This document shows, in pieces, positions 19,340 through 45,693 of a DNA stretch of 64,000 bases. The notes below the pieces were generated by a model that was not told where the DNA came from, made no database searches, and worked only from the letters and a program-made list of their open reading frames with translations. Each line of letters starts with the position of its first letter. Position 1 is the stretch's first letter. The stretch covers positions 1,597,950-1,661,949 of the forward strand of contig NW_003314295.1 of assembly GCF_000143415.4 (NCBI RefSeq), in the 5' to 3' direction. The translations under genes and the position numbers were made by a program. This DNA is from Selaginella moellendorffii (Eukaryota > Plantae > Lycopodiophyta).

Positions 19340-20059
19340 TCTTGGATACAAATCGAGAAGAGAGAACGATTAAGAGAGACAGTGAGACGTTCACTTCTCG
19401 TCCCATCTTATATAGTTGCTCTGGGAGCGCCAGGTTGCATGCATGCCTCTCCTCTAACAGAAGACTGGGATATACCCTGGGAGACTCTGCTAGATTCGCG
19501 AAGAGTTTTAACTAACGTCTTTTGGTTTGTCTCAAAATTCTATAGGAAATACAGAAACAAATAGGTGAGGCTTGATGCTTACAGCCAAACACCATTTGGA
19601 ATTGGAAAAAAAAAAAATATGTAATAGAAAAGCGCGATCCCTTCACGGGCAAGAGCTGGAGCTGTAGCGATGCTCGGGTACCCGCGATTTGCCCCGCATT
19701 ATCAGGATCACCATGCTGCTTCGGCGCACTCGTATAATTCCGCCACCTCTTAAATATTGAAGAGAAATGCGTGAGCTTGGGAATGTAGTCCCCATCCCTG
19801 GTTGGGAATCCACGACTTGGATATTCTTAACAAAAGTATGAACCAAACAAAAACGCGACGTGTTTTTTCTATTTTGCCTTGTTCTTCACCGTTTTGTTCC
19901 ATCCCCCCATTTCATGGTTGATGCAGTGCCAAAGGTTGTAGCTGCCAAGCCCCCAATGGTCTCCTCGTCATTCTGATATCGCCAGACCATAGCCATCTTT
20001 TCCTCCCTATTATTTCTCATTAAGCAAAGTCAATCGCGCTACTCAATCTGCAACCAAGA

Positions 20060-25210: not shown

Positions 25211-25265
25211 AATATCCATTAGACAATACTAAAGCTAGAATTTATTCTGATAAGGTTTTGTGGGT

Positions 25266-27179
25266 TTACGTAATTACAGTGCTTAGAAAGACCAAGGATC
25301 CATCGTGCGTGGGATCCAGCTCCAGAATACTTTTAGCAACACGTACACCTCTTTCAAAGTCAGAGTGAATCTTACAAGATCCAAGCAGTGCTCCCCGCAC
25401 CACGATGCTTGGAGGGAAAGGCGAAAAATTAATCAACACCTCCGCATCTTCTAGCCTTCCAACACGTCCCAGAAGATCAATCACGCAGGAAAAGTGTTCC
25501 GCAACAGGTGCTAGCTCGTAGTCGGAGAGCATCGCCGTGAAGTAGTGGCAGCTGGAACTTACAAGTCCTGCATGGCTGCAAGCAGCAAGAACGCTCACGA
25601 AAGCCACCGCATTTGGGGTCACTGCTTCGAGCAGCATTTGGTGGAAGAGATGGATGGATTCTCGAGTGCGGCCGTTCTGGAGGAGAGCTCCCAGGAGTGT
25701 GTTCCAGGTAACCAGAGCAAGCTGCGGCATTCTCTCAATCATTTCGATGGCTCTACTCAGCTGCCCGTTCTGGACGTAAGCTCCGACCATGGAGTTCCAC
25801 GTTACCTCGTTCCGGCTGGAGATCCCATCGAAAGTTCTCTTGGCATCGTCGCAGTAGCCGTTCAGCGAGTACCCCGCGAGCAACATGTTCCACGATGCGA
25901 TATCAACTTGGAGCATTCTTTCAATGAGCTGCCTCGCTTCCATTAAGAGACCACTCAGCGTGTAGAGCTCCACGAGCGCAGCACAGGAGCTCGAGCTCAC
26001 AAGAGGCATATTTTGAAACAAAACTGCGGCTTCCTCGAGCACCAAATTTCTACAGCACTCCAAAACCACGATGCTCCACGAAGACGCGGTTCGATGTCTC
26101 ATTTCCTTGAAGAAATACAATGCCTTGAGCAGCTCACCATTCTGGGAATATCCCACCAGCATTGTATCCAAAGTCACCTCATCTCGCAGGGGCATTGTCT
26201 CAAGGAGCCTCTCGGCCTTGTCCGTACACCCGGCGAGCGTGTACGTCGCGAGCATTGTGTTCGCGGCCACGACGTCCATCATTGGGATCTTGCAAAGGAA
26301 AATATCCTCCGCCTGTGCAAAGTCTCCATGGCAGGAATATGCCTGGATCATGGCTGTCCAGGAGAAAACGCTCCGTGAGGGGCTCGTCTCAAACATGAGC
26401 TTGGCGTCCTCCACATGCCCGGCCATGGCATATGCCAAAAGCATCACGTTCCAAGGGACGAGAGTCCAACAAGGCATCTTGTAGAAAAGAAGTTTTGCCT
26501 CTTCAAGATGCCCAAGATCCGCATATACGTGCACCATTTCGGTCCATGTCACAACGTTTCTCTCCAGCATCGAGTCGAAAACTTTGAGAGCCTCTTCAAT
26601 CTGGAAACATGCCGCGTAGCAGCTGATCATGACCGTACACGTTACCACATTGATCTCCGGCATGGAATCAAAAGCCTCCAATGCCATGTCAAAATTCCCG
26701 CTTTGGGTATATGCAGCTAGCATCGAAGTCGACGTGATTACATTCCACATTGGCATCCGACCATAAATCTGCTGGGCCACCTCCACTTTCCCTAATTCCG
26801 CCAGTGGCTGGATCATCGACGTCCAAGAAGCAACGCTTCTCTCACCCATAGCGTTGAAAGCTTTCCACGCGGAATCCAAATGCCCAGCCTTGGCATATGC
26901 TGCAAGCATGACATTCCTCGACACAAGATTAGGGCAGGGCAGAGAATCGAACAGCAAGCTCGCCTCGTTTAAACGACCATTAGCGGCAAAAGTTGCCATG
27001 ATAGCCGTCCATGAAACCACGTCTTTTTGCGGCATTCTATCGAAGAGATTCTTGGCGCTGGACAGATCCCCATTTAGGGCAAATGCCTGGAGCATCATGT
27101 TCCACGAGTAGAGGTTTCGATCTCTGGCGCGCTGGAACACGGCGAATGAATCGGCCGCGCTGCCGCATTTGCCATACAT
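25266..27179 (-). CDS. PLS-class pentatricopeptide repeat protein (S/SS-rich, truncated E domain, no DYW), intronless
   Basis: MYGKCGS start, repeated F(D)xMPxxNVVSW(T/N)xMLxAY motifs, E region GALLGSCKIHSD; frame is open upstream to ~27341. Confidence 0.9.
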   Translation of the reverse strand: MYGKCGSAADSFAVFQRARDRNLYSWNMMLQAFALNGDLSSAKNLFDRMPQKDVVSWTAIMATFAANGRLNEASLLFDSLPCPNLVSRNVMLAAYAKAGHLDSAWKAFNAMGERSVASWTSMIQPLAELGKVEVAQQIYGRMPMWNVITSTSMLAAYTQSGNFDMALEAFDSMPEINVVTCTVMISCYAACFQIEEALKVFDSMLERNVVTWTEMVHVYADLGHLEEAKLLFYKMPCWTLVPWNVMLLAYAMAGHVEDAKLMFETSPSRSVFSWTAMIQAYSCHGDFAQAEDIFLCKIPMMDVVAANTMLATYTLAGCTDKAERLLETMPLRDEVTLDTMLVGYSQNGELLKALYFFKEMRHRTASSWSIVVLECCRNLVLEEAAVLFQNMPLVSSSSCAALVELYTLSGLLMEARQLIERMLQVDIASWNMLLAGYSLNGYCDDAKRTFDGISSRNEVTWNSMVGAYVQNGQLSRAIEMIERMPQLALVTWNTLLGALLQNGRTRESIHLFHQMLLEAVTPNAVAFVSVLAACSHAGLVSSSCHYFTAMLSDYELAPVAEHFSCVIDLLGRVGRLEDAEVLINFSPFPPSIVVRGALLGSCKIHSDFERGVRVAKSILELDPTHDGSLVFLSTVIT

Positions 27180-27413
27180 CTCGACGAGGAGATTGGATAG
27201 GTAAGAACCGTGTCGGCGATCGATCCCGCGCCCATGGATCGCGCAATTCAGGCGTTGAGCTTGGCGGAGATCTCTGGCATTCCCGCAGGATCGGATGAGG
27301 CGAGCGAGGTGCTCTATCGCCGCCGCTGCCAGATCTTCTCTTCATCCCAAGGAGAAGTGGAAATATTTTGGGGGAGAAATCGTCAAGCCCTAGAACAGAG
27401 GGTTTGATTGAGG

Positions 27414-30400
27414 ATGCTGGAGAAGATTGGACTTCCGCCCAGGCCGTCTGCGCGTGGCCGGACCTGGGTGGTGGATGCGTCGCACTGCCAGAACTGCGCC
27501 TCGCCTTTCTCGATCTTCAATCGCAAGGTATGGATCTAGAGATTGACGACGATTTCTCATCGCATTGTGGCTTCTAGCATCAGTCGCGAGTTTTTCTTTC
27601 TTAGTGTAGCATTGCGAGCTCTGAGCTAGAATTCCAGCGATCAAGATCTTTTGCTCCTGTTGTTTGCATGCCTTGCATTTATTTTCGTGGCGACTGTTTT
27701 CCTTTGGTTCTTGGTGGCATTTGCGATGATCTTCTCATCTCTTTTTTCACAGCACCATTGTCGGAGATGTGGAGGCCTTTTCTGTGGCAACTGTGTCCAA
27801 TCCAGAATGTATCTCCGCGGCCAAGGAGACGCTCCAGTACGCATTTGTGAGCCTTGCAAGAAGCTAGAAGAAGCCGCTCGCTTCGAAGCTCGCCAGGGAC
27901 GCAAAAAGAAAGGTGGGCAAACATCGTGTTCTTCCTGACGAGAACTAAACTTTTTGCTTCTAAGCAGTAGAGGAAACCAGTGATGAAGAGGACTTACTAA
28001 AGGCTCTTCTCGTAAACAAAGAATCGGAACCTGCTACCTCGGAACCAGTCTCGCCGGAAGCTTTGCGACAGCAGGCGCAGGAGGCGAGAGCTACATATTC
28101 TGCCTTGAAAAAGGAAGGGAAGGCCGAAGATGCAACCAAGGCCTTCAGGCGTGCCAAAGAACTCGAACGGCAGGCTGATGCGTTAGCATTGTTTCTTCGT
28201 AGAAACGTTAAAAAGGCTTCAAAGGCTAGCAGTGCCACTGAAGAGAATACTTTGCAAACAACGAAGTCCGAGAACTTTGGAAAGACTGTTGGTATGTCTT
28301 CCGAAAGGCCATCGAGAAGAAGCACAGGTGACGAAGATCTTATGAAGGAGCTTAGAGATCTTGGCTGGTCGGAGGACCTGGATAGGAAAAAGGCCTCTGA
28401 CGCAGACATACTGAGCGAAGGCGAGCCTACTTCAAGCACCGCAGCTGGAACACTACAGATGGAAATTCTTGGTCTCAAAAGAAAAGCATTAGCTCTCAAA
28501 CGGGAAGGAAAGATGGCAGAAGCGAAGGAGGAGCTCAAGAAGGCCAAAGTTCTGGAGAGACGGCTGGAAGAGATCCAAACTCTAGGTGAAGATGTATTAG
28601 ATGAAGAGGAGGAGGACGACGGGGATGAAGTTAGCGCGGTTTTGAAAGCCTTGGAGAAAGAAGTGGATACGAAGCACAAAGGCTCTGGGAAGGAAGTTCC
28701 ACTTTCTGCTGCTAGTCTTCCAGTCTTCACCGAGGAAGACGAGGCACAAGTTCACGTAAGCGATACGGACATGTCCGATCCAGATATGATCGCGGCGTTA
28801 AGGGCCATGGGCTGGGCTGAGGAAGCCGGAGTCCTGGAAAGTTTCAGCGCTCCGAGGACTGACCGCATCAATAAACAGGAGCTCCAGGCTGAAATTCTAC
28901 GTCACAAACGCGAGGCCTTGGCTCTCAAGCGTGCTGGAAAGATGGCGGAGGCTCGAGACGAGCTGAAGCAAGCAAAGACCTTGGACCAGATGCTGGAGGC
29001 GTCACAAGTTCCAAAGCCCGAGGCTATGACGGAGGATGATGAGCACGTCGAGGTCAGCTATCAAGATATGCAAGATCCAGAGATGCTAGCAGCGCTGCAA
29101 GCGTTGGGATTCAGCGAGCCGGATATGAAGAAGGAAAAGCGCGCTCTGGAGGAAGAAGTGAGTGCTGTTAAGTGGTCAGCAGCTGCAATGCAGTCGCGAG
29201 AACAGGCAAAACACCAGACGGATCAGGCCGCCTTGAAACCGATGAAAATCCCAGCGACAACATCCTACATTATCGACGACGTTGACGATACTGGCGAGGC
29301 ACTCACCATCCAAAGCTTAAAGTCCGATCCAGAACTTGCTGCTGCTTTGAAAGGGATGAACCTGGATGGCGAGGTTGGAGAACTTCCACCGTCGCACGCA
29401 GAAGCTGTAGACACACCTCAAAGACGGCCGAAACCGAGAGCTATACCTACCATGCAAGAACTACCGCAAAGAAGCAAGCGTGAGATTCAGAAGGAACTCC
29501 TTGGTAGAAAGAGGAAGGCGTTGGCTCTGAGGCGTGAAGGGAAAGAGGACGAGGCTGAGAAGGAACTCAAGGACGCCAGCGTTCTAGAGGCACAACTCAA
29601 GGCTCTGGAAGATGCGGAGAGACCTCCAGTTGATGTTCATGAGAACGAAGAAGTTGACGAGGATAACACCGAGCAGGCCGAGGTAACCGACGAGGACATG
29701 AATGATCCTGCTATGCTGGCCGCTCTGAGCGAGATGGGATTCAAAGGGGAGGTATCTACAAAAGCTAACGATAAGAAAGAAGAAGCAACACGGAGAGAGA
29801 GTTCTTTCGAAGGCGAATACGGAGAAATTGGCCTTCTGGTAGACATTGTTCCTCCGTTATTCTCGAGAGCTACACACACACCACCAGCCGCTCCCGTGAA
29901 CCAACACCAAGACCTCCTCACTGGCGATATATTCGTACCATCGGTTCCCGAGAAGAAGACTATAGAGCCCCCGGCAGTTCTAGCAGCAGCGCAGCCTCCA
30001 GTGCCAAGCACGAACTTGAACTTGAACGTGCCTTCATCGAGCATCGAGCAGGAGATTCTGGAGCACAAAAGACGAGCTTTACAGTTCAAGAGATCTGGAA
30101 ACGTAGCTGCTGCCAAGGAGGAGCTCCGACAAGCCAAACTTTTGGAGAACCACAGGCAAGCAGTGGCTGTGGAGGAGGTTCCAGTTCCACGTCCAAGTGG
30201 AGCAGCACCACCGAAAGATAGCAGCCGGATCTCTCCTCCAGCCACAGGTCAGGCACCTCGCTCGAAGGACAGGATGAAGATACAGCAAGAATCTCTTGCT
30301 CACAAAAGAAGAGCCTTGGCACTGAGGAAAGAAGGCAAGATGGACGAGGCCGAGGCCGAGTTTGAGAAAGCAAAGGCTCTGGAGAAGCAGATGGAAGAGA

Positions 30401-30717
30401 TGGACCCTCCATCTCGAGTTCCGGGTTTGCAAGCGAGCGCTATGGACGGAGTGGAAGATCTTTTGGATCCACAGCTTCTGGCAGCTCTCTCAGGTCTTGG
30501 CTGGCAGGATGAGGAGATGAAGCTGCCGTCCTCTCGATCTCCTCAGCAGCAACAGCAGCAACAGAAGCAAAGCAGCTCCTCGCCATCGCAAGAGCTGCAA
30601 GATCGAGTGCGAAAGCTAAAAGTCCGTGCTGTGGAGCTCAAGCGAGCTGGAAGGCAGCAGGAAGCGCTGGAAGTTCTTAGAGAGGCAAAAGCTCTCGAGA
30701 ACAAAAACAAAAGCTAG
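27414..30717 (+). CDS. FYVE-domain protein with DM14-like helical repeats (FYVE4-like), 3 exons
   Basis: MLEKIGLPPRPSARGRTWVVDASHCQNC...RKHHCRRCGGLFC...VRICEPC FYVE finger; repeated KRKALALKREGKMAEAKEELKKAK. Confidence 0.9.
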
Positions 30718-30855
30718 CAAAACTCTAGTATGGGCTGGCATATTCATTTTGGCATCAAGCCAAAAGATTCTCTGAATATACTAAAACGGCAACAGCTTTC
30801 TCTATGACTCGGCTTCTATATAAAACATTGACAATTCACCCAAGGTGTGGTTGAG

Positions 30856-31060
30856 ATGAGGAGCATGTATTTCTTACTAATTGCTAGCCTTCTGTGGCTA
30901 GTGGTTGATTGCGGTAGATTAGGTTATATTGCTGGTAAGCTACACCCATTCAACTCCTTATTTCCAGGTGTACACCGGCAATGTGGCCCAGCCTATTTCC
31001 AGGTGTACACCGGCAATCGCCGCCTTGTTCACTTGTGCTTCCTGATTAATATTCCAAGAG
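30856..31060 (+). pseudogene. Paralog (probably degenerate) of the small secreted-protein gene at 3695
   Basis: MRSMYFLLIASLLWLVVD...G|GTAAG exon and GVHRQCGP exon with an internal duplication (TATTTCCAGGTGTACACCGGCAAT x2). Confidence 0.45.
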
Positions 31061-32336
31061 TACTCTTTTTTCTTTTCTTTCTTTCTCCTCGTAATTACGT
31101 ACGAGAAACAGTCATCTTCATCTTGTGCATTTTTGCTGTTTATTTTGAGAGAGCTATAACGCGAGCACTCCTCTTTGCGATTCTGTGAGGTTTCCGGCCA
31201 GCTGAGAGCTGCTTGCTCGGTTCTTGCGGCAGATTGCAGATCAGTAGTGCGATTGTATAACAAGAAAGAAAGAAAGACAACATGCCCCTTTCTCTAAGGC
31301 TTAATTAGACTCTTGTTTCGACTGCCGTTTTCGTTTTGAGGATGATTTTCACAGCCATGGCGTATGGTCTTCCTTCCTGGTACAGCATGACATTGATATG
31401 GAATGGCCAGGATTGAGCTAGACTTCACATGAACATGAATGGAGATGAGTGAAGCAGTAGAGGACACGATCATGAATACGGTCAGAAAAACTGACGGAGT
31501 TATTGAAGTTTGTTTGGTTCCTACAAAGAAGACTTTTGCGCATTTCTCTTCAATATTTTAGAGGTGCAAAATTGTTTTTGTTGAGAGCACAAGGTGGGAG
31601 TCAGGGGTGATGATGTGAGCTGTAGCGGTGCTCGGCCACCCGCCTGAAATTTGCCCCACATTATCAGTCCAACTCTTACTGGTGAAAGGATCAGACCAAT
31701 CTTAGATTATCCTAGCAGTGTTGAGGTAAAAACATATTTGATCCGAGATGATCCAAGCAAAGGTGGCACCGATCAATGCTGACAACTACAAGTCGTGTAA
31801 ATACATCCTAATTGCTGATTGAGATCTTTCGCCTAGGTTTGGCATACATTCGGCCAATTCATCATGCCAGGAGAAAGACGCACAAAGATAGCCAAGACAA
31901 ATCCAGAGGTGAGGAGGTATCGAAAGATTTCTTATATTTGTTTGAAGAGGGAACCCATTGATTGTGTAGCCAACACAAGGGAGGAGCTGGTGAACCGTAA
32001 TCTAATTCTTTTTGGGTGAAATTCTCTTAATGTAACCACTCAAATCTCTTTGCAACTCTCTGAGGTTTTCTGCCAGCAGAGAGCTGCTTGCTCGGTGCTT
32101 GCTGCAGATTGCAGATCAGTAGCCTGATTGACTTTACAAGAAAGAATTAGACAGGAACAAAACAACATTTCCCTTTCTTTGTTTCATGACTGTAGCTTCT
32201 TTGCTTACCTGGGCTTTCCTTGTTCAAAGCAGAGCAGGCTAGCATCTCTTGTAAAGAGAGGAAAATTTTGAAACAAGAGATTCTAGCCTGCTCTGCTTTG
32301 AACAAGGAAAGCCCAGGTAAACAAAGAAGCTACAGT

Positions 32337-33437
32337 TGTTGAGGTATACGCTCTCTATGACATGATCCTAGGTGGCAGGAGTGCCATTTCATTGATCCAG
32401 GTGTAGGCTAGAGGTGTGTCTCTTCATCATGTATATATAGCTATGATATATATGACTATACTGGGAGTCATCCACCATCATGTAGCTTCCGCTCTTCTTC
32501 TCTTCATGGTATCGGAGCCCTGAGGGCTTCAGATCCTAGGACGATGGCGCTGGCCAAGGAGGAGGCCAGCGAGGATGACGATGAGCCACCAGACGTGGCT
32601 GAGAGGTGCCAAGATTTGGCACTGTGCTGCATTGAGCGCCAAGGTAACGGCACTAGCAAGCTGAGCAAGGCGCTAGGGTGTGATCGAGCAGAGACTGGCC
32701 CGGAGGCACTGGCAGAGGTGCTGAGAGAGGGCTGGCTTGAGGCACCGAGTGGTACTGGAGTGCTGAGTGAGGCGCTGGAGAGCAGCCGAAGGCGCTAGCA
32801 GAGGCGCTGAGAGGAGGCACCGAGCAGAGACTGCACTAGGGCGCTGAGCAAGGTGCTGAGAGGCGGAGAGACTGCACTAGGGCGCTGAGCAAGGCGCTGA
32901 GGCGCTGGCACAGGCGCTGAGAGAGGGCTGGCGTGAGGCACCGAGCACAGGCACGAGCAGATAGGCACTGGCAGAGGCGCTGAGAGAGGAGAGACTGCGA
33001 TCAGAGGCCGTGAACGAGGCGCTAGGGCGTGCGAGGCCTCGTAGAGACTCACCAGAGGTGAGTGCCGGGCCTAGAGGCACGAGGCACCGAGGGCTGGCCA
33101 AGCAGAGACTCCACTGGAGCGCTGAGTGAGGCGCTGCTGTGAGAAGGCATTGGCAGAGGCGCTGAGAGGAGGCACTGAGCAGAGACAGATTTCTGTCGTG
33201 GATATGACAGAGTGCTTGGATGCAGAGGGAGAGTGATCTCAGATTCATGTCATCGAGATCGAGAGGGAGTGTTGAGGTATACGCTCTCTATGACATGATC
33301 CTAGGTAGCAGGAGTGCCACTTCATTGATCCAGGTGTAGGCTAGAGGTGTGTCTCTTCATCATGTATATATAGCTATGATATATACGACTATACTGAGAG
33401 TCATCCACCATCGTAGCTTCTGCTCTTCTTCTCTTCA
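32337..33437 (+). mobile_element. Non-autonomous miniature LTR retrotransposon (TRIM-like): LTRs 32337-32506 and 33270-33437
   Basis: TG...CA LTRs of 170/168 bp, PBS TGGTATCGGAGC at 32507-32518, PPT GAGAGGGAG at 33261-33269, non-coding GC-rich repetitive interior. Confidence 0.92.
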
Positions 33438-33439
33438 TG

Positions 33440-34703
33440 TGTTATGAAATGGGGACTCCCAGCCTTGTGAGTGCAGCAGCGCTCCATGCTGGGTCCACCT
33501 TTATTGCGGAAGACAGATCAAGAACAGAATGTGTTGGGCGTGATCACCTACAGAACCTAAACGGATGTGTCCCTTCTGCTGACGTGGCATCCCAGCTTGA
33601 GATTGCGGCTTAAGTCCTCAACACTCCCACTCGAGCTAAGTTGGGGTCAGCCTCGAGCAACTGCACACCAAGAGCTTGGACATGCTTGGAGAATGCAGCT
33701 AGGGGCAGAGCTTTTGTGAAAACATCTGCCACCTGATCTCCCGTCGCACAATACACTAGCTGTATGTGCTTGGTACGTCCGTGATACTTCGGGTTCTTCT
33801 TGGACTTGCTCCCACTGGTTCCATTAGTTCACTGGGCCCAACCTGTCCCACACTGTTGCAGATCGCTTGCCCTTTGAAGATTGACCAGCAAATAGTGCTT
33901 GATCTTGAGATCCAACTCCCTCATTGGTCTCCATCAAGTTCTCTGCTGACTTCAACTGAAGGACCATTTGTCAAATTTCTTTGACGAGTGAGTAGTCGCT
34001 GTTGTCAGAAGATACTTCGCCACGCCTTTGATGACAACCGACTTGAGCTTCGGTTCACTCACTGGTGTCTTCGTGATGCGTGCGATCTGGCTTGCTACCT
34101 TCCTCAACCTTCCAACAAAGGCTTGAATGGACTCACCTTCATGCTGTCTTACAGAACCGAGTTCTGTCTCTAAGTCCAGCAATGTGGTCTCATTCTCCTT
34201 TCCGAGGGTTGCTTTCAGGTTTTCCCAGTTCTCGTGCGCAGTCTTCGTGATGTCGAGATGGCAACTGAACACCTTGCCCAGGCCTCTGCCTAGAATGCCC
34301 AAGGCCTTGATGTTCTTTCCATCCCACTCTTTGCAGTCAGCCTTGTCCGTTGTGGGAGGGCGCGTCCAGGAACCGTCGACCACTGGCCACAGCTCCTTCT
34401 GCATAAAGTAGTACTCGAGTTGCTCCTGCCATCTGCTGAAATCCTTGCCATCAAAGATCTCTATGGCGTCGCACACACTCCCCATCTTCAGGATCGTTCT
34501 TCACACGGGCTCCGATACCATGTTATGAAATGGGGACACCCAGCCTTGTGAGCGCAGCAGCGCTCCATGCTGGGTCCACCTTTATTGCGGAAGACGGATC
34601 AAGAATAGAATGTGTCGGGCGTGATCACCTACAAAACCTAAACGGATGTGCCCTTCTGCTGACGTGGCATCCCAGCTTGAGATTGCGGCTTAAGTCCTCA
34701 ACA
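33440..34703 (-). mobile_element. Internally deleted Ty1/copia LTR retrotransposon: LTRs 34521-34703 (5') and 33440-33623 (3')
   Basis: PBS TGGTATCGGAGC (34509-34520, minus), gag ORF 33952-34485 (FDGKDFSRWQEQLEYYFMQKELW), RNase H tail (RTKHI...DQVADVFTKAL), purine tract before the 3' LTR. Confidence 0.92.
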
Positions 34704-36477
34704 ACAGTCATGAAACAAAGAAAGAGAAGTGTTGTTTTGTTCCTCTCGGGGCTCAGCATGAATTCTTTCAATATGGAATGGTGAGGATCAAGCTAGACAC
34801 ATGGGAGGATGAGTGAAGTAGTAGAGGACCACCAAGGGGCAGTTGTTAAGTATGCTTGTTTGTTTGTCTACTTCATACACTGCCCAAGCTCATGCTTTTA
34901 AGGGCAGCAAGATCGTACTTTCTATGAGTGTGCCTGCTTCAAGGTGGGAGTCGGCATGGTGATATTCTCGTAGCCGGTGGCTGATAATGTGGGGCAAATC
35001 ACGCCAGGCAGGTGATTGGGCAGCACTACAACTCCAGCTCTTGCTTGTGAAGGAATCACTCATAGTTTTTTTTTGCCAATTATCATAACTTGGAGATTGA
35101 GTAGTTTTTCAACCTAAAAATCCTTTAGCTGGCAGACTGCTTTGCATTTGTATGGCATCTTCTGTGCTCGACTTGGTCACTGCACACTTACCACCTTTGC
35201 TACTTGATTGCAAGTGTTTGTGTTTGAGTGTTGGTATCTTCAATATAGAGACATGCCACTTGAGGCACTAGTTTGCACTCTTATTGCAAGGGGTGAAAGG
35301 ATGGAAAAATGTACTTGGACAATATTTGTGAAAGTTATAAAGGTATGGAAGATATATTGCACTTTAGAGTTAAAGCTCTTTAGGAAGGAAACCACCTACA
35401 CTAGACCAAAAAGCAACAATGCAATCATAGTGATAAGACCAAAAGGCAACAATGCAATTGTAGTGATAATGGAGATAAAGATGGAGTAAGTTTTAAATTA
35501 AACTTGCATTCCACCAGTCCCAAAGAGCAAATCGATGTGCAAGGAGACATTCTACTAGATATCGTAGAGTTCATCACAGAAACATGGCAGAATGTAAGCT
35601 ACATTTTTCTCATGCTATGTGCTAAATCGATTTAATTATACAGATCCCTGAGTCAGCTATTTACTTCATTGAGGATGGAAAGAAGGTTCCTGCGTGCTGA
35701 AGTTTCTGTTTGATTCTTTGCATGAGGTTAATGCTCCAAGTGTCTCAATAAGTTCAACATCTAGGACATGTGACACTTTTTGTTTTAGCGACAAATATTT
35801 TTTAAATATGGCCTCTAATATATAGCGAGAACAGCACATGGCCAACCAAAAAAGTGGAGGCCAATGTTTCTTTTGGAAGTTATTCAAGTGTTGTTTTTAG
35901 TAAAATGGCTGAATTTCGCTATACACCCCTTCCAAAGGTCATTTTGTTCATCCTTTCAAAACTTTAGGGTTAAGATGTAATTTCACAACTGCCCAGTGCA
36001 GTAATTGTCTTAACCAATCCCATCATGCATTGACAATGCAATCATTTTGTGAATTTACAGTTTCCAGTAACATTTGTAGTCTGTAACATTAATAACCAAT
36101 AAGAATAATGAAGTATAAAGAAAAACTTACCAGAAGACTGGTACAAAGTACTCCACTGTAGACTCCTGTTGCTTATATTCTCTATTATGCTTGAGCTTCC
36201 CAAAAACAATACATTTTATGGGATAGCTGCAGTTAGGATCATTGTCAATTGCAACACTAATAACATTGAGAGTGATATCTGCAGATATCTTCTTGTTGAT
36301 ATCATGGGCTTGGTGAAGAGATATCCTCAAAGTTGGTAAAACATAAAGAGCTCCAAAGTTAATACACCCTTCCTTCACTTTCTTTTGCACCCATTTCTTT
36401 GGCTCTGTCTTGACTATGGGCAATAACTTTGCCACTAAAAAAGGGCTAATTTATTAAAATTTAAATAATAAATAAAT

Positions 36478-38310
36478 TAAAATTACTTTGTTTAATATAT
36501 CAACTACCATTATGTCAATTTTTTATGACTTTTTGTTGAGTAAAGCACATAATTTTTTAAGATATCATTAGTGTCTTCATCCATTTTTTTCATTTCTTCC
36601 AAAGTCTTAATTATCCCAGATCCATTACCTAAAAAAAAAATTTATAAATTAAAATTTTAAAATAAAAAGGTATTACAAAAAAAAATAATAGTAGTAAATG
36701 GAGATTGCCTTGGTTGAACTAATTTTTCTGTTTCATCATGATATTTGTGATATGCCTCATATTTACCCATTTTCAATTTTACCACTTTTTTCTTTCTAAT
36801 TGCATTTTATCCTAATATATTGAATGCATTATTACTTGGTGGGAATCTAAAACATAAATTGTTAAAACTATAACTTCATTAACAATTTCAAATTAATTTG
36901 ATGTAAACCATATGTTAAATATGTAAAACATAATATGTAAAACATATTTTTCTGTGAATATATAAAACATATTATATAGTTTCCATGATTCCAAAAAAAT
37001 CCAAGAATAATTGTGTTTCTTTTAAAAAAAATTAATCTGAAAAATAAGAATAATTAATACTATCAATAACAATGATGTAATATAAATAAACATGTATGGA
37101 AGAAGGCAATAGGAGTAACTTCTACTCAAGGCAACTCTTGCTATAAAGCATGTAATGGAGCACTACTACTTAAAAACTACGAAAACAAAAAAATATTTAG
37201 AAGAAAACTTTTGTAGTATGAGCAAGTTTTAATAAAGTGGAATCATGTGATGAGCTTGCCTTATAAAACATTAATAAGTATTAATGAACACTATTATATT
37301 AAAAAACTGATAACATTACTTATCTAAAGGGTTTTTGTGGTAAGAGCAAGCTCCACATATGCAATGGAATAAAAGTCATTAACTTTTAGTTGAAATAAAA
37401 TTACTTTGTCCAATATAACCAACTACCAGTATGTCAATTTTCTATCACTATTTGTTGAGTAAAACACATAACTTTTTGAGATATCACTAGCGTTTCCATC
37501 AATTTTTTTAAAATTTTTTCCAAAGTTTTAACTATCCCAAAGCTATTACCTAAAAAATAAATTTTGTAAACTAAAAATTTAAAATAAAAAGGTATTATTA
37601 AAAAACTAATAATAGTAAATGGAGATTGCCTTGGTTGAACTAATTTTTCTGTTCCATCTTGATATTTGTGATATGCCTCATATTTACTCATTTTCAATTT
37701 TACCACTTTTTTCTTTTTAATTGCATTTTATCTCGACATATTGAATGCATTATCACTTGGTGGGAATTTAAAACATAAATTGTTAAAACTATAACTTTAT
37801 TAACAATTTCAAATTAATTTGATGCAAACTATATGTAAAATATGTAAAACATATGTTTTTGTGAATATGTAAAACATATTACATAGTTTCTGTGATCCCA
37901 AAAGAATCCAAGAATAATTGTATTGCTTTTAAAAGAATTTGATTTGAAGAAAAAAGAATAATTAATACTATCAATAACAACAATATAATATAAATAAACC
38001 TATATGAAAAAAGGCATCTTAACTTGGCCTTGGTAATAGAAGTAACCTTCATCCAAAGTAACTCTTATTATAAAGCATATGATGGAATACTACTACTAAA
38101 AATCTACAAAAACAAAATAGTACTTGGAAAATCTTTGTAACAAAAGTAAACTTTGGTAAAGTGGAATCATGCGAGGGATTTACACTATAAAGCATCAACA
38201 ATCACTAATGAATACTATTATATTAGAAATTTGATAACATTATTCATATAAAGGGTTTTTGTGATAAAAATAAACTTCAAAAGTGCAATACAATCAAAGT
38301 CATCAACCTT
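36478..38310. repeat. AT-rich ~0.92-kb diverged tandem duplication (units ~36478-37395 and ~37396-38310)
   Basis: AAATGGAGATTGCCTTGGTTGAACTAATTTTTCTGTT and many other blocks repeat at ~920-bp spacing. Confidence 0.85.
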
Positions 38311-39744
38311 TGATGAGTAAAACACTAAAAGAAGAAAGGGGAAAAAAACTCATTTAAAGTGTTCAAGGGTCACAAAAAAGTCTGGAATGCCGCATAATGT
38401 GTTTTCATGATGTAACTCTTCCATTCCATCTTTCAGTTCTAGCTCTTCGAGTACAAGTTTGGTCCTGTGTGCCACCTCTTCGGTTATGTTTCAGTCACAT
38501 GCCATAACCTCCAGAAGTTTCAAATTGATAGGTAGCAATCCCTTGAAATGGACTATGCCATCTGAAAAGAAAATCAATGGAAATTACAAATTGGAAATAG
38601 CTTACCAGAGATCAAGCGTTGGAAAGCACCACATCTTACAATGACGGCCAGAAGAGTGTTTGTACACGTAAGAAGATTAGGATGCCGCCCAAGGAGGGCA
38701 GCCAGAAAGAGCAGCCATCGTGTCCTTTCATTACTCGAGTAATCCTGAAACTTTTTGTAGTGGCTGTAGGAAAACTGTCGGGAAATTTGACAATGTAATC
38801 AATCTCTCACCTGGATAGAACCATCAAAATTTCTTGGTCTTCTCCACTGAAAATACGCTCCAGAGTTGGTATCCAATTTCTTAAGAACTGTGGAAGCGTA
38901 CTAGAATCACTATTCACGAGTTTAAAGTATGGGCAAAAGAATCAACAAAACTAACGAAGCTCACCTTAGATTAATCACCCATAGAACCTGTGACGGCGTA
39001 AATGCGTGAACTCCTTTCCTCTCCAGCTTCTTCACGGTGTAGAGCATGCATGCCATCCAAATACGCTCAGCTTCATTTGCCTGAAATAGACGATAAAATT
39101 CTTTTGGAAAACCACCTGTTAAACAAGGAATTCATTTACGGTGCCACCCAACAAAGTGATACAATTGCGTGAAGCAGCACCAATGCTCTCTCCATGTAAA
39201 TCTCGCTTGCCTGATCAAATAAATTTCGAGCCCTTCCAACACAAGAAAGCATCCAAACCTCGCAACACGGCCGGAAGCAGCGATCATTGCCATCGCACGA
39301 CAGCTGGAAGCAGCGATCATTGCCAATCGCAAGGCGGCTGGAATAGACCCTCACCATCGCGGCATGGCCAGACATTACAATCGAGCCTTGCCATCGCAGC
39401 ACCAGCATCGAGCATTGCCATGGAACTGCGGCCAGAATTGAGCAGCCTCCACCATGGAATTTCTGCCAGAGGCAGTAGCAATCAATCCATCTTGCTCTTC
39501 ACTTGGTATTAGCGCCAGCGCCATGGGATTCTCCAGACCATTGATGCCAGGTGGGAAATGTTTCTGGCGCTCTTCTCGCCTAGCTTCTTCTTGAAGCTAA
39601 GCTTTGCCACGGGCAACCCGCGCGGTGTGACGCGGGTGGCATGTAGATCGGGGATGGGAGCTGCTGTGTCGGCAAATGCACACATAGTCGATCGCTCCGC
39701 CGTCGAATTCCAGGGCTGGCTCAATCATGGACGGCTCGTTGGGG

Positions 39745-40244: not shown

Positions 40245-40970
40245 CCCTGGCCTTGCAGCCACTCACGAAAGTCCAAGCATACAGTTCTTTTCTACTGTTA
40301 GCGTTAGCGATCACATGAGCTGTGAACTGGTGTTAAATACGTTTAGCACAATGTGAGAGAAGCTATGGGCTTCATCAACTAAAGGCTAACGTTCAGTGCG
40401 ATCATTCGTTTTGAATTGGCTTGCCAGTGGAATCAAGATGTCAAGATTCTGGCAAGATTGGTGTACCAACAACGTATTCTTAACTACGAATCCAACATCC
40501 TGTACCGAAAAATCAGGATCAGTAACGGTTTAATCTAAGAGGACAATTTGTCCTGGCATTTTAAGAACTCAATGTGCCTCCCCGTAAGAAATGGCCAAAA
40601 CTCTTTCTATTCGAGTAGCCAAGGTGTCAACTCGGGCCATTTACACAACTCTGCCTCTCCAAACCAAAGACCTGTATAAAACATAAACATTGTTTTGAGA
40701 AACTCTTGCAAGCTGGAAACAAGAAAGTCATACCAATTTCCCACTCTCCATTCGCGACACTGTCACTGCCATGGATGACATTCCTGGCATAACTGAGCAT
40801 GAAAAGTTCATTCCCGAGGGAGAGCTTTAGAAACCAGAACCTTACCTTCCAACACCAACAGCAAGATCCCCACGTATCGTTCCTGGTTCAGCTTGCAGCC
40901 ACGACTCCAGGACCTTCCCATGCCTGGAATCCAAAAGCCTCACCGAAGATGCCGCAAGAGAAGAGAAACC
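40245..40970 (-). pseudogene. Degenerate direct copy of the 3' half and 3' flank of the NDPK gene (44280-45070)
   Basis: [17 protein letters not shown] and intron and flank sequence shared; internal deletion. Confidence 0.85.
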
Positions 40971-42128
40971 TCTACTCGTGGAACATGATTCCCCATGCAA
41001 TGGGGATCTGTCCAGCGCCAAGAATCTCTTCGATAGAATGCCACAAAGATTCATGGACGGCTATCATGGCAGCTTTTGGCGTTAATGGTAGTTTAAACGA
41101 TGCGAGATTGTCTCTGCCCTGCCCTAATCAAATGTCATGCTTGCAAAATATGCCCTGGCTGGGTATTTGGAGTCCTGGCTCAGCTTTCAACGCAATGGGT
41201 GAGAGAAACTTTGCATCTTGGACGTCGACGATTAAGCCGCTGTAAAAATTAGGGAAAGTGGAGCTGGCCCAGAAGATTTACGATCGGATGCCAATGTGGA
41301 ATGTAATCACGTCGACTTCGATGTTAGCTGCATATACCCAAAGAGGGCAGTTTGACTTGGTATTGGTGGCCTTTGATTCGATGCCGGAGATCAATGTGGT
41401 TACATCGATCCAATAAGATGCCTCTTGTGAGCTCGAGCTCCTGTGCTGCGCTCGTGGAGCTCTACACGCTGAGTGGTCTCTTAATGGAAGCGAGGCAGCT
41501 CATTGAAAGAATGCTCCAAGTTGATATCGCGTCGTGGAACATGTTGCTCGCGGGGTACTCGCAGAACAGCTACTGCAAAAGAACTTTCGATGGGATCTCC
41601 AGCCGGAACGAAGTAACCTGGAACTCCATGGCCGGAGCTTACGTCCAGAACGGGCAGCTGAGTAGAGCCATCGAAATGCTCGAGCGAATGCCGCAGCTTG
41701 CTCTGATTTCCTGGCACATACTCCTGGGAGCTCTCGTCCAGAACGGCCGGACTCGAGAATCCATCCATCTCTTCCACCAAATGCTGCTCGAAGCAGTGAT
41801 CTCATATGCCGTGGCTCTCGTGAGCGTTCTCACTACTTGCAGCCATGCAGGACTTGTAAGTTCCAGCCGCCTCTACTTCACGTCGATGCTTTCCGACTAC
41901 GAGCGAGCACCTGTTGCGGAACAGTTTTCCTGCGTGATCGATCTTCTGGGACGTGTTGGAAGGCTAGAAGATGCGGAGGTGTTGATTAATGTCTTGCCTT
42001 TCGCTCCAAGCATCGTGGTGTGGGGAGCACTGCTTGGATCTTGTAAGATTCACTCTGACTTTGAAAGAGGTGTACGTGTTGCTAAAAGTATTCTGGAGCT
42101 GGTTTTCCTAGGCACTGTAATTACGTAA
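40965..42128 (+). pseudogene. Inverted, internally deleted copy of the PPR gene at 25266-27179
   Basis: Near-identical MPLVSSSSCAALVELYTLSG...VFLGTVIT; frameshifts and stop in the 5' part; large deletion near 41410. Confidence 0.9.
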
Positions 42129-43416: not shown

Positions 43417-43675
43417 CAGCTGCCACCACTTCACGTCGATGCTCTCCGACTACGAGCTAGCACCTGTTGCGGAACACTTTTCCCGCGTGATTGATCTTCT
43501 GAGACGCGTTGTAAGGCTAGAAGATGCAGAGGTGTTGATCAATTTTTCGCCTTTCGCTCCAAGCATCGTGGTGTGGGGAGCACTGCTTGGACGTTGTAAG
43601 ATTCACTCTGACTTTGAAAGAGGTGTACATGTTGCTAAAAGTATTCTGGAGCTGGATCCCACGCACGATGGATCC
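43417..43675 (+). pseudogene. Second PPR 3' fragment (E region)
   Basis: MLSDYELAPVAEHFS...LELDPTHDGS nearly identical to the 25266 gene C-terminus. Confidence 0.85.
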
Positions 43676-44672
43676 CCCAAATTCTCTATATCGTCTGATA
43701 GTCAAAGGACGCTGTGGCGGAGGGGAAGTCTGGGTTGTGGATGAGTTCTACAAGGAGATACAGAAAATCGAAGTTGAAAATTGCACACCAACACCACACC
43801 ACATCCTCCAGAAGGCACCACCACTGACAACACCTGTCCTTAGGGATGAATAACATAAAGGAAGAAATGTGTGTGTATGTGTGTGGTTGGTCATGTGTAT
43901 TGTGCCAGAGTGCTGCATGGTAACTATATAAATTCCTTATACAATATCAAAATAAAAGTGTTGGTGTTTGCAGCAACTTGCATTCGTTAATATTATATAC
44001 AAACTGCCTGATAAATTCCTCTGAAGAAGGAAAAAGTTCTCATCATGAAGAATGCAATCTTTGCCCATTGTTGTTTTCTGCGTCCATCATGGTGAGCTTT
44101 GCGAACTCTTTTGGTGTTTGGATCTTGTACATGCATCCAGTCAAACCTTGTTGACTGCTTTCAAGTTTTAAGAAATTTAAACTGTGACAGTAGAGGGAAA
44201 TTACTGATGCATCACTAGCTATTAGGTCTTATTCCTGTACTATTGGTATTATGATGCTAAAATATGTTATCTTCTAGATCCTGGCATTGCAGCCACTCAC
44301 GAAAGTCCAAGCATACAGCTCTTTTCTACTGTTAGGAAAGTAAAGTATCCTGCCTTGATGGTTAGCGATCACTGGAGCTGTGAAATGGTGTTAAATACGT
44401 TTAGCACAATGTGAGAGAAGCTATGGGCTTTATTAACTAAAGGCTAACGTTCAGTGCGATCATCGTTTTGAATTGGCAATCAAGGTGTCAACAAAGATTC
44501 GTGTACCAACAACGCGCAGACGCAAAAGAGTATCTATTCTTAACTACGAATCCAACATCCTGTACCGAGAAATCAGGATTAGTAACGGTTTAATCTACAA
44601 TGTTTTATTCCGTGTGACGGAGGCATTTTAAGAACTCAATGTGCCTCCCGTAAGAAATGGCCGAGATTCTTT

Positions 44673-45693
44673 CTATTCGAGTAGCCAGGGCGTCAACTCG
44701 GGCTGCCATTTACACAACTCGGCCTCTCCAAACCAAAGACCTGCATAAAACATAAACATTGTCTTGAGAAACTCTTGCAAGCTGGAAAAATGAAGCCATA
44801 CCAATTTCCCGCTCTCCATTCGCGACACTGTCACTGCCATGGATGACATTCCTGGCATAACCAAGCAACAAAAGTTCATTCCTGAGGGAGAGCTTTAGAA
44901 ACCAGAACCTTACCTTCCAACAGCAACAGCAAGATCCCCACGGATCGTTCCTGGCTCAGCTTGCAGCGGGTTCGTCGATCCAATAAGTTTTCGTGCGGAA
45001 GCCACGACTCCAGGACCTTCCCATGCCTGGAATTCAAAGGCTTCACTGAAGATGCCACAAGAGGAGAGAAACTTACCATGCAAACAACAGGGCCAGAGGT
45101 TATGTACTTCACAAGCTTGGGAAAGAATGGCTTCTCTTGGAGCTCCTCATAATGCTTCTGCAAAAGAGAGAAAAAGAAGAAAAAATTTGAGAGCAAGAGC
45201 TTTAAGCTTTACGTCACCTTTGCAAGATCCTCGGGGCACTGGAACATTTTCAATCCCGCGAGACGAAATCCTTTCTTCTCAAAGCGAGAGATGATTTCTC
45301 CAACCTTACAAAAGAAAAAAAAATTCGTTTGTTGTCATAGCTATTAGGACGCAAAGGCTCATCGAAAGAAATGTACCAGTCCGCGTTGGACTCCATCAGG
45401 TTTCACCATCACATACGTTTGCTCTAGCCCTCCCTGCCAAGATGGAAAGAAATCCAGCGGAAATTCAACAACTACAAACAAACCTCTGCTCTGGGTTGAG
45501 CGACGACCGAAATTTTCTCCTCGCTCGACACAGCAGCTCGCGAGGATGATGCGATGCGCCATCGAATGGCGCTAGGGCGCCACGAGATCCGGTGGCAGTG
45601 GAATGCCAGCGCCGAACGATTCCTCCTCGGCGAGCCGGTATCCACTCTAGGGCTAGAATGCGCGACTATTGGAGCTAGAGAAGAAGAAGCCAT
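44673..45693 (-). CDS. NDPK: Nucleoside diphosphate kinase, plastid-type (NDPK2-like)
   Basis: Transit-peptide-like N-terminus; [45 protein letters not shown] catalytic His motif. Confidence 0.93.

What the first reader, a model, noticed from the sequence alone, without database searches (positions are those of the whole stretch)
32332..34708. Two different LTR retroelements fused tail-to-tail and inserted as one unit with a single shared TSD
Seen: a TRIM-like element (+, 32337-33437) and a deleted copia element (-, 33440-34703) abut with only 'TG' between their 3' LTR ends. Neither has its own target-site duplication, but ACAGT flanks the pair (32332-32336 and 34704-34708). The other arm of the local inverted repeat preserves the empty site (GAAGCTACAGTCATGAAAC) with a single ACAGT. 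The LTR bodies are unrelated, yet both start TGTTGAGG and share the same variant PBS (TGGTATCGGAGC) and a near-identical PPT (TCGAG[A/T]GGGAG). Intra-element LTR divergence is similar (by eye, 5 substitutions + 1 indel vs 6 + 1). Inference: two non-autonomous cDNAs mobilised by the same copia machinery were joined at their U5 ends and integrated through their two U3 ends. The extra TG equals the first PBS bases, as expected for an unprocessed cDNA end.
Basis: partly seen in the sequence, partly recalled or inferred. Interest (0 to 1): 0.8.

Follow-up and report, generated by a model that had tools for sequence, protein, structure and literature searches.

The report
Two retrotransposons inserted as one unit
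In one haplotype of the spikemoss Selaginella moellendorffii, a miniature LTR element and a gutted copia element lie tail-to-tail inside one 5-bp target duplication, a natural trace of an integrase inserting two different DNA copies through their two like (U3) ends in one event.

Summary
Element A (+, 32337-33437, no coding capacity) and element B (-, 33440-34703, internally deleted Ty1/copia) abut at their U5 ends with only TG between them. Neither has its own target duplication, but ACAGT flanks the pair. The other arm of a local inverted repeat keeps the uninterrupted site.

LTR divergence is equal: 5 substitutions plus one indel in A, 6 plus one in B. The two share a 16-nt U5-end/PBS match and a 22-nt PPT/U3-terminus match (20 of 22), while the LTR bodies are unrelated. 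A 520-nt contig from a 2020 public run crosses the junction without a difference, so an assembly chimera is unlikely.

The window is S. moellendorffii scaffold GL377599.1. The allelic scaffold GL377591.1 lacks the pair, but through a 2,556-bp gap that also removes 17 and 172 bp of flank. It is not a clean empty site.

Best reading (about 0.7): one integrase event used two U3 ends, and the U5 ends were blunt-joined by the host before or after. The order of events, the origin of TG and the shared helper are inferences.

The closest precedent is a laboratory MoMLV provirus (Colicelli and Goff 1988). I found no natural heterodimer in the literature searched. The scan has unverified first-reader notes of similar dimers elsewhere in this genome.

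The parts
32332..32336 (.). Left copy of the target-site duplication, ACAGT
32337..32506 (+). Element A 5' LTR (170 nt, TGTTGAGG...CA)
   Evidence: In one search, contigs of other A copies diverge exactly at 32336/32337.
32507..32520 (+). Element A primer-binding site (TGGTATCGGAGC plus CC)
32521..33258 (+). Element A internal region: degenerate GC-rich tandem repeats with no protein-family match
33259..33269 (+). Element A polypurine tract-like motif, TCGAGAGGGAG
33270..33437 (+). Element A 3' LTR (168 nt); its U5 end is complete and ends in CA
33438..33439 (+). TG filler between the two U5 ends; identical to the first two PBS bases of A
   Evidence: repeat D12 extends 2 nt past both A LTRs
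33440..33623 (-). Element B 3' LTR (184 nt); its U5 end is complete
33624..33634 (-). Element B polypurine tract-like motif (TCGAGTGGGAG on the minus strand)
33650..33800 (-). Remnant of the extreme C-terminus of copia pol (approximate limits). Deletion breakpoints lie near 33794 and 33761.
   Evidence: translation; contigs of longer relatives diverge at 33794 and 33761
33952..34485 (-). Truncated gag ORF of element B (177 aa)
   Evidence: (Pfam Retrotran_gag_2, E 5e-11)
34509..34520 (-). Element B primer-binding site (TGGTATCGGAGC on the minus strand)
34521..34703 (-). Element B 5' LTR (183 nt)
34704..34708 (.). Right copy of the target-site duplication, ACAGT
32150..32252 (.). Left arm of the host inverted repeat; it carries the uninterrupted target site
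32273..32336 (.). Right arm of the host inverted repeat, proximal part; the arm resumes at 34704-34747 after the pair

Best explanation
Two separate linear cDNAs were inserted into the chromosome in a single integrase reaction that used the U3 end of each. One cDNA came from a non-coding TRIM-like element (A). The other came from an internally deleted Ty1/copia element (B). Both were probably made by the same copia-type helper.

Their two U5 ends were blunt-joined by host end joining. This happened either before integration, giving a U3...U3 dimer, or after a trans two-molecule integration, closing the break. The A end still carried two extra bases, TG, of the kind left when the tRNA primer or PBS copy is not cleanly removed. 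Such an end lacks a terminal CA-OH and would be a poor integrase substrate.

Shown: the structure, the single duplication, the preserved empty site, the equal LTR divergence, the shared cis signals and the reality of the junction. Inferred: the end joining, the order of events, the origin of TG and the common helper.
For: - Precise U3 termini (TGTTGAGG) at both outer ends, and complete CA-ended U5 termini at the inner joint.
- One 5-bp duplication around the pair and none around either element.
- The paralogous repeat arm is continuous across the site.
- LTR divergence is 2.98% in A and 3.28% in B, Fisher p = 1.0.
- A and B share 16/16 nt at U5-CA plus PBS, and 20/22 nt across PPT plus U3 terminus, at homologous positions. 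The rest is unrelated.
- A 520-nt contig of run X6 (2020) lies on 33242-33761 with 0 differences and bridges the joint.
- Retained PBS or PPT bases at cDNA termini and at ligated circle junctions are documented for Tf1 and HIV-1 (PMC11042837).
- A MoMLV provirus integrated through two U3 sequences is on record: Colicelli and Goff 1988, title seen in the reference list of PMC5778647.
Against: - No allele with a clean empty site. The allelic scaffold lacks the pair only through a larger 2,556-bp gap.
- Only this one instance was verified here.
- The TG match could be chance (about 1 in 16 to 1 in 8) or untemplated addition.
- B's own U5 end looks integration-competent, so nothing forced it to be bypassed.
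- The library type of X6 is unknown, and it may come from the same plant line as the assembly.
- No autonomous partner was recovered.
Confidence: 0.7

Rival explanations
1. The U5-U5 joint was made inside the virus-like particle by reverse transcriptase, not by host end joining. On reaching the end of A's template, the enzyme jumped end-to-end onto the U5 end of a co-packaged B cDNA. This gave one inverted chimeric molecule, which integrase then inserted through its two U3 ends.
For: The final structure and single duplication are the same. There is no loss of bases at either U5 end, and a 2-nt insert at the joint. Tf1 reverse transcriptase adds untemplated bases to cDNA 3' ends (PMC11042837).
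Against: It would need strand displacement along the whole of B. No microhomology was used at the joint: it reads TG then TG, not a shared TG. Nothing in the sequence separates this from ligation.
Confidence: 0.12
2. Two independent insertions, one element first and the other later at or beside its edge, followed by a small rearrangement that erased the inner duplication.
For: The site lies in a long hairpin-forming inverted repeat that could be a hot spot. Plant LTR elements are reported to favour palindromic targets (PMC6911290, listed, abstract only).
Against: A second insertion into the same 5-bp stagger would leave ACAGT between the elements. TG cannot be derived from ACAGT by a simple deletion. 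Both inner ends are complete to the CA. The flanks are contiguous in the other repeat arm, so no host DNA was lost. The LTR ages are equal.
Confidence: 0.07
3. Assembly chimera: the two elements were joined wrongly when the Sanger-era scaffold was built.
For: Both belong to repeated families. A is high-copy in runs X1 and X2.
Against: An X6 contig crosses the joint with 196 and 322 nt on either side and no difference. Another X6 contig covers B's private deletion junction region, 33732-34110. A chimera would not create a matching 5-bp duplication at a site that is continuous in the paralogous arm.
Confidence: 0.03

Closest known systems
MoMLV provirus with inverted LTRs, integrated through two U3 sequences (Colicelli and Goff, J Virol 1988; 62:633; citation seen, paper itself not held)
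   Same: Both outer ends of the integrated DNA are U3 ends, which one normal cDNA cannot give. Integrase-type insertion.
   Different: That was a laboratory retrovirus, from memory an att-site mutant, and a single virus species. Here it is a natural, old insertion in a plant genome, made of two different element families, each complete with two direct LTRs.
2-LTR circle junctions of retroviruses (host end joining of the two cDNA ends)
   Same: Blunt ligation of unprocessed cDNA termini, sometimes with retained PBS or PPT bases at the joint (PMC11042837).
   Different: Circles join U5 to U3 of one molecule and are dead ends. Here U5 is joined to U5 of another molecule, and the product is integrated.
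In vitro concerted integration of two donor DNA molecules by retroviral integrases. Also, from memory, Ty1 particles inserting artificial transposons with U3 termini at both ends (Devine and Boeke 1994).
   Same: Integrase synapses two like ends from separate or artificial DNAs and makes a normal-size target duplication (PMC2857682).
   Different: Those are test-tube reactions with designed substrates. This is a genomic fossil.
Complex three-LTR tandem retrotransposons with one duplication (Sabot and Schulman 2007, PMC1950507; Zeng and Sun 2018 preprint, 10.1101/452573)
   Same: Two elements enter the genome as one unit formed before integration.
   Different: Those are head-to-tail, belong to one family, share a middle LTR, and are explained by template switching or homologous recombination. 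Here the elements are inverted, unrelated in their LTR bodies, and have four LTRs.
Alternative transposition of DNA transposons (reversed-ends or hybrid-element insertion of Ac/Ds and P; PMC3744419, listed)
   Same: The transposase or integrase pairs ends that belong to two different element copies.
   Different: Those are cut-and-paste elements on chromosomes, not extrachromosomal cDNAs.

Membership tests
Ty1/copia LTR retrotransposon (element B) | Direct LTRs with TG...CA termini | tested here: met
   LTRs of 183 and 184 nt, 96% identical, TGTT...AACA
Ty1/copia LTR retrotransposon (element B) | Copia-type gag | tested here: met
   Pfam Retrotran_gag_2, E 5e-11, 42.8 bits against a cut-off of 27
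Ty1/copia LTR retrotransposon (element B) | pol with protease, integrase, reverse transcriptase and RNase H (autonomy) | tested here: not met
   Only about 45 codons resembling the pol C-terminus remain. B is a non-autonomous deletion derivative.
Ty1/copia LTR retrotransposon (element B) | PBS complementary to the initiator Met tRNA directly after the 5' LTR, and a PPT before the 3' LTR | tested here: inconclusive
   The PBS-like 12-mer and the purine-rich motif are in the right places. The host tRNA sequence with the G variant could not be fetched.
Ty1/copia LTR retrotransposon (element B) | Own 5-bp target duplication | tested here: not met
   Flanks are TCATG and ACAGT. The duplication surrounds the A+B pair instead.
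TRIM (terminal-repeat retrotransposon in miniature; element A) | Short LTRs (about 100-250 bp), PBS, PPT, no coding capacity | tested here: met
   LTRs of 170 and 168 nt, PBS and PPT present, no Pfam hit for its ORF
TRIM (terminal-repeat retrotransposon in miniature; element A) | Miniature overall size with a short internal domain (classically a few hundred bp) | tested here: inconclusive
   Total length is 1,101 bp, with a 763-bp internal domain made of degenerate tandem repeats. It sits at or above the usual upper limit, hence 'TRIM-like'.
TRIM (terminal-repeat retrotransposon in miniature; element A) | Dispersed multi-copy family with copies at other sites | tested here: met
   In runs X1 and X2 depth over A is tens of times that of the flanks. 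Contigs with other left flanks end at 32336/32337.
Two-U3-end integration (Colicelli-Goff type event) | Both outer termini are precise U3 ends | tested here: met
   TGTTGAGG reads inward at 32337 (+) and 34703 (-)
Two-U3-end integration (Colicelli-Goff type event) | Integrase-size target duplication around the whole unit, at a site shown to be continuous before | tested here: met
   ACAGT on both sides; the other repeat arm is continuous
Two-U3-end integration (Colicelli-Goff type event) | A polymorphic allele with a clean empty site or the whole unit, never one element alone | tested here: inconclusive
   The allelic scaffold GL377591.1 lacks the unit together with 17 and 172 bp of flank
Two-U3-end integration (Colicelli-Goff type event) | Dependence on integrase and on host end joining | not testable with these tools
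   Needs genetics or biochemistry

The most novel reading that the evidence does not exclude
In S. moellendorffii, integrases of this and other LTR lineages may habitually pair the U3 ends of two different cDNAs made in one particle. Tail-to-tail heterodimers under one duplication would then be a recurrent class of insertion. Each would be a fossil record of which autonomous family mobilises which TRIM. Here, the B copia family would be the helper of TRIM-like A.
Probability: 0.3. Interest if true: 0.75.

Novelty: new variant of a known kind. Interest (0 to 1): 0.6.

Why it matters
It matters for three reasons.

- It is natural, in-genome evidence that an LTR-retrotransposon integrase can use two like ends from two molecules. 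Until now this was known from test-tube assays and from one laboratory retrovirus.
- The pair physically links a non-coding TRIM-like element to a copia lineage with the same PPT, U3 terminus and PBS. Which autonomous elements mobilise TRIMs is largely unknown, and co-integration fossils offer a way to read that from sequence.
- LTR-annotation pipelines expect one element per duplication. They would misread or discard such units.

If the other unverified notes in this genome hold, the event is recurrent and could be counted genome-wide.

Tried and rejected
- **Exact-protein look-ups.** The B gag ORF and the neighbouring PPR ORF are not on record.
- **Search for the autonomous partner.** The homology search with gag found nothing at E 1e-10 or better among proteins of 97-310 aa. 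The exhaustive representative search gave only distant gags, 38% identity or less among those at E 1e-7 or better. The best hit was a Tetracentron gene, which is irrelevant. The autonomous partner was therefore not identified. The only sign of one is a pair of contigs in X1 and X2. They match B at 33794-34543 with 6 differences plus small indels, and run on for about 1.2 kb into sequence that B lacks.
- **Pattern scan of metagenome contigs.** I scanned for the shared PPT/U3 19-mer. The 17 hits match only the 19-26-mer itself, carry no PBS and have no further similarity to A or B. They are probably chance.
- **Allelic empty site.** The other haplotype was found but is uninformative, because the gap is larger than the pair.
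- **Dating against the haplotype split.** LTR divergence is 3.1% (95% CI 1.6-5.6%). Flank divergence between the haplotypes is about 2% on the left and about 4% on the right. This cannot tell whether the gap allele ever held the pair.
- **Rfam.** There is no 5S-like (Cassandra) or other RNA family in A or B. The only hits are sub-threshold miRNA-precursor matches to the host hairpin.
- **Literature.** Ten full-text searches found no natural tail-to-tail LTR heterodimer under one duplication. The Colicelli and Goff paper itself is not held.
- **Window and earlier notes.** There are no other copies of either LTR in the window. The sequence look-up in earlier notes was blank.
Full report
**What is there.**
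Window 32337-33437 (+) is a 1,101-bp LTR element, A. Its LTRs are 170 and 168 nt and differ by 5 transitions and one 2-bp indel. They start TGTTGAGG and end CA. The 5' LTR is followed directly by TGGTATCGGAGC, and the 3' LTR is preceded by TCGAGAGGGAG. The 763-bp interior of A is a degenerate GC-rich tandem repeat with no protein-family match.

Window 33440-34703 (-) is a 1,264-bp element, B. Its LTRs are 183 and 184 nt and differ by 6 substitutions and one 1-bp indel. They also start TGTTGAGG and end CA. B has the same 12-nt PBS and the motif TCGAGTGGGAG before its 3' LTR.

B carries a 177-aa ORF that matches Pfam Retrotran_gag_2 (E 5e-11). Just upstream of its PPT lie about 45 codons that read like the conserved extreme C-terminus of copia pol. 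That resemblance is judged from my own knowledge of the motif. B is therefore an internally deleted, non-autonomous Ty1/copia element. Contigs of longer relatives in public runs diverge from B near 33794 and 33761, which marks the deletion breakpoints.

**The joint and the flanks.**
The two U5 ends face each other, both are complete to the CA, and only TG (33438-33439) lies between them. The direct repeat between A's two LTRs extends two bases further (repeat D12). So TG equals the first two PBS bases of A. On the strand of B the filler reads CA, which is not B's PBS start.

ACAGT lies immediately outside both U3 ends. The 5 bp next to the inner ends match neither it nor each other.

The insertion sits in the right arm of a host inverted repeat (left arm 32150-32252, loop of 20 nt). 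With the pair and one ACAGT removed, the right arm aligns to the reverse complement of the left arm. There are 5 mismatches in 103 positions and no gap at the join. This gives an internal copy of the empty site. It rules out loss of host DNA between two separate insertions.

**Is it real DNA?**
The window is 100% identical to S. moellendorffii GCA_000143415.2 scaffold GL377599.1. That is a Sanger-era assembly (dating from my own knowledge). In public runs, a 520-nt contig of run X6 (released 2020, library type not on record) lies on 33242-33761 with no difference. It has 196 and 322 nt on either side of the joint. A second X6 contig covers 33732-34110. An assembly chimera is therefore unlikely. 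X6 may, however, come from the same plant line.

X6 covers B and A's 3' LTR but not the rest of A, although A is high-copy. That pattern would fit an RNA library with read-through from B. I could not check this.

In runs X1 and X2 (another sample, with flanks 1-4% different), A is a high-copy family. Contigs with other left flanks end exactly at 32336/32337, which confirms the LTR boundary. The listed contigs do not show whether that sample has the pair.

**The other haplotype.**
The allelic scaffold GL377591.1 (locus L001) is colinear with the window at 98.07% from 25237 to 32319 and resumes at window 34876. It lacks 2,556 bp: 17 bp of left flank, the pair and 172 bp of right flank, with TA shared at the junction.

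The missing flank includes the distal right arm of the inverted repeat. It also includes sequence that has a paralogue upstream at 31396-31465. The gap is therefore a derived deletion, not the ancestral state. Whether it removed 189 bp or 2,556 bp cannot be told. LTR divergence (3.1%, CI 1.6-5.6%) brackets the local divergence between the haplotypes. This allele neither supports nor refutes the one-event reading.

**Mechanism.**
One normal cDNA has one U3 end and one U5 end, so a unit with two U3 ends needs two molecules or a rearranged one.

- Sequential insertion fails. A second insertion into the same stagger would leave ACAGT, not TG, between the elements.
- Deletion-based models fail because the flanks are contiguous.
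- Exact inversion of one member of a tandem has no mechanism.

What remains is one integrase reaction on two U3 ends. The U5 ends would be joined without loss. The join was made either by host end joining, before or after strand transfer, or less likely by an end-to-end jump of reverse transcriptase. The equal LTR divergence (2.98% and 3.28%, Fisher p = 1.0) fits one date.

Retention of PBS-derived bases at cDNA termini and at ligated junctions is documented for Tf1 and HIV-1 (PMC11042837). Two-donor coordinated integration is standard in vitro (PMC2857682). A 2-nt extension past the CA would, from general knowledge of copia-type integrases, make A's U5 end a poor substrate, and this gives a reason for the U3-U3 choice. 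That step is inference, and the TG match alone is weak.

**Shared helper.**
Between A and B, only two stretches are similar, and both sit at homologous functional positions. One is 16/16 nt across the U5 CA plus PBS. The other is 20/22 nt across PPT plus the first 8 nt of U3. The PBS may simply mirror the host initiator tRNA, which I did not test.

The PPT/U3 match is better evidence that the same RNase H and integrase act on both. There is weaker similarity in the 35 nt after the PBS: both elements have an ATG 35-37 nt from the PBS start. There is also weak similarity in the 60 nt before the PPT. This hints that A descends from a relative of B. No autonomous partner was recovered from protein databases. 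Longer B-like contigs do exist in the reads.

**Comparison and novelty.**
The closest precedent is the MoMLV provirus with inverted LTRs integrated through two U3 sequences (Colicelli and Goff 1988; citation; paper not readable here). Complex plant elements described so far are head-to-tail three-LTR tandems of one family.

Ten full-text searches found no natural tail-to-tail heterodimer under one duplication. That library omits most subscription journals, so this is absence of evidence only. I class the finding as a new variant of a known kind.

The scan's own notes list further first-reader reports of like structures on other pieces of this genome: s1-424093, s1-394811, s1-351425, s1-368677 and s1-430246. 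The last of these also carries a follow-up agent's note that reads it the same way. I could not reach those sequences, so they are leads and not support.

Noticed in passing
window 32150-32336 plus 34704-34747: The host sequence at the insertion site is a near-perfect hairpin: arms of about 103 nt and a 20-nt loop before the insertion. Rfam gives only sub-threshold miRNA-precursor matches, the best being MIR3627 at 49.7 bits against a gathering score of 64. It could be a MITE-like foldback or a young hairpin RNA locus that the insertion split.
   Followed up: partly
L001:14900-14915 (GL377591.1), against window 32320-34875: The allelic haplotype carries a 2,556-bp gap that removes the pair with 17 and 172 bp of flank, with TA microhomology at the junction. 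This is a heterozygous structural difference in the sequenced plant.
   Followed up: yes
window 34834-35107 (+); related pieces at 31396-31667 and 19636-19705: A weak full-length match to plant SRP (7SL) RNA: 28.5 bits against a gathering score of 105, E 2e-5. It lies about 130 bp downstream of the insertion site, with diverged paralogous pieces nearby. It may be decayed 7SL-like copies. If so, the insertion lies just upstream of a former Pol III gene.
   Followed up: partly
run X4 (organism B), laid on window 33552-34433: A run labelled as a different organism holds B-like gag and LTR pieces at roughly 91-100% identity, but nothing of A or of the flanks. The B copia family is shared beyond this genome, while A is not seen there.
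   Followed up: no
window 36474-38311: An AT-rich block (GC 0.26) made of two units of about 920 bp, 82-86% alike.
   Followed up: no
window 40303-40899 and 44361-44967; also 41864-42102 and 43417-43655: Two further pairs of direct repeats, 92-95% alike and 4.06 kb and 1.55 kb apart. They look like LTR pairs of another, possibly nested, element.
   Followed up: no
run X6, laid on window 33242-34509: The small 2020 runs X6-X11 cover B and A's 3' LTR, but neither the high-copy interior of A nor the flanks. This would fit RNA read-through from B into A rather than genomic DNA.
   Followed up: no
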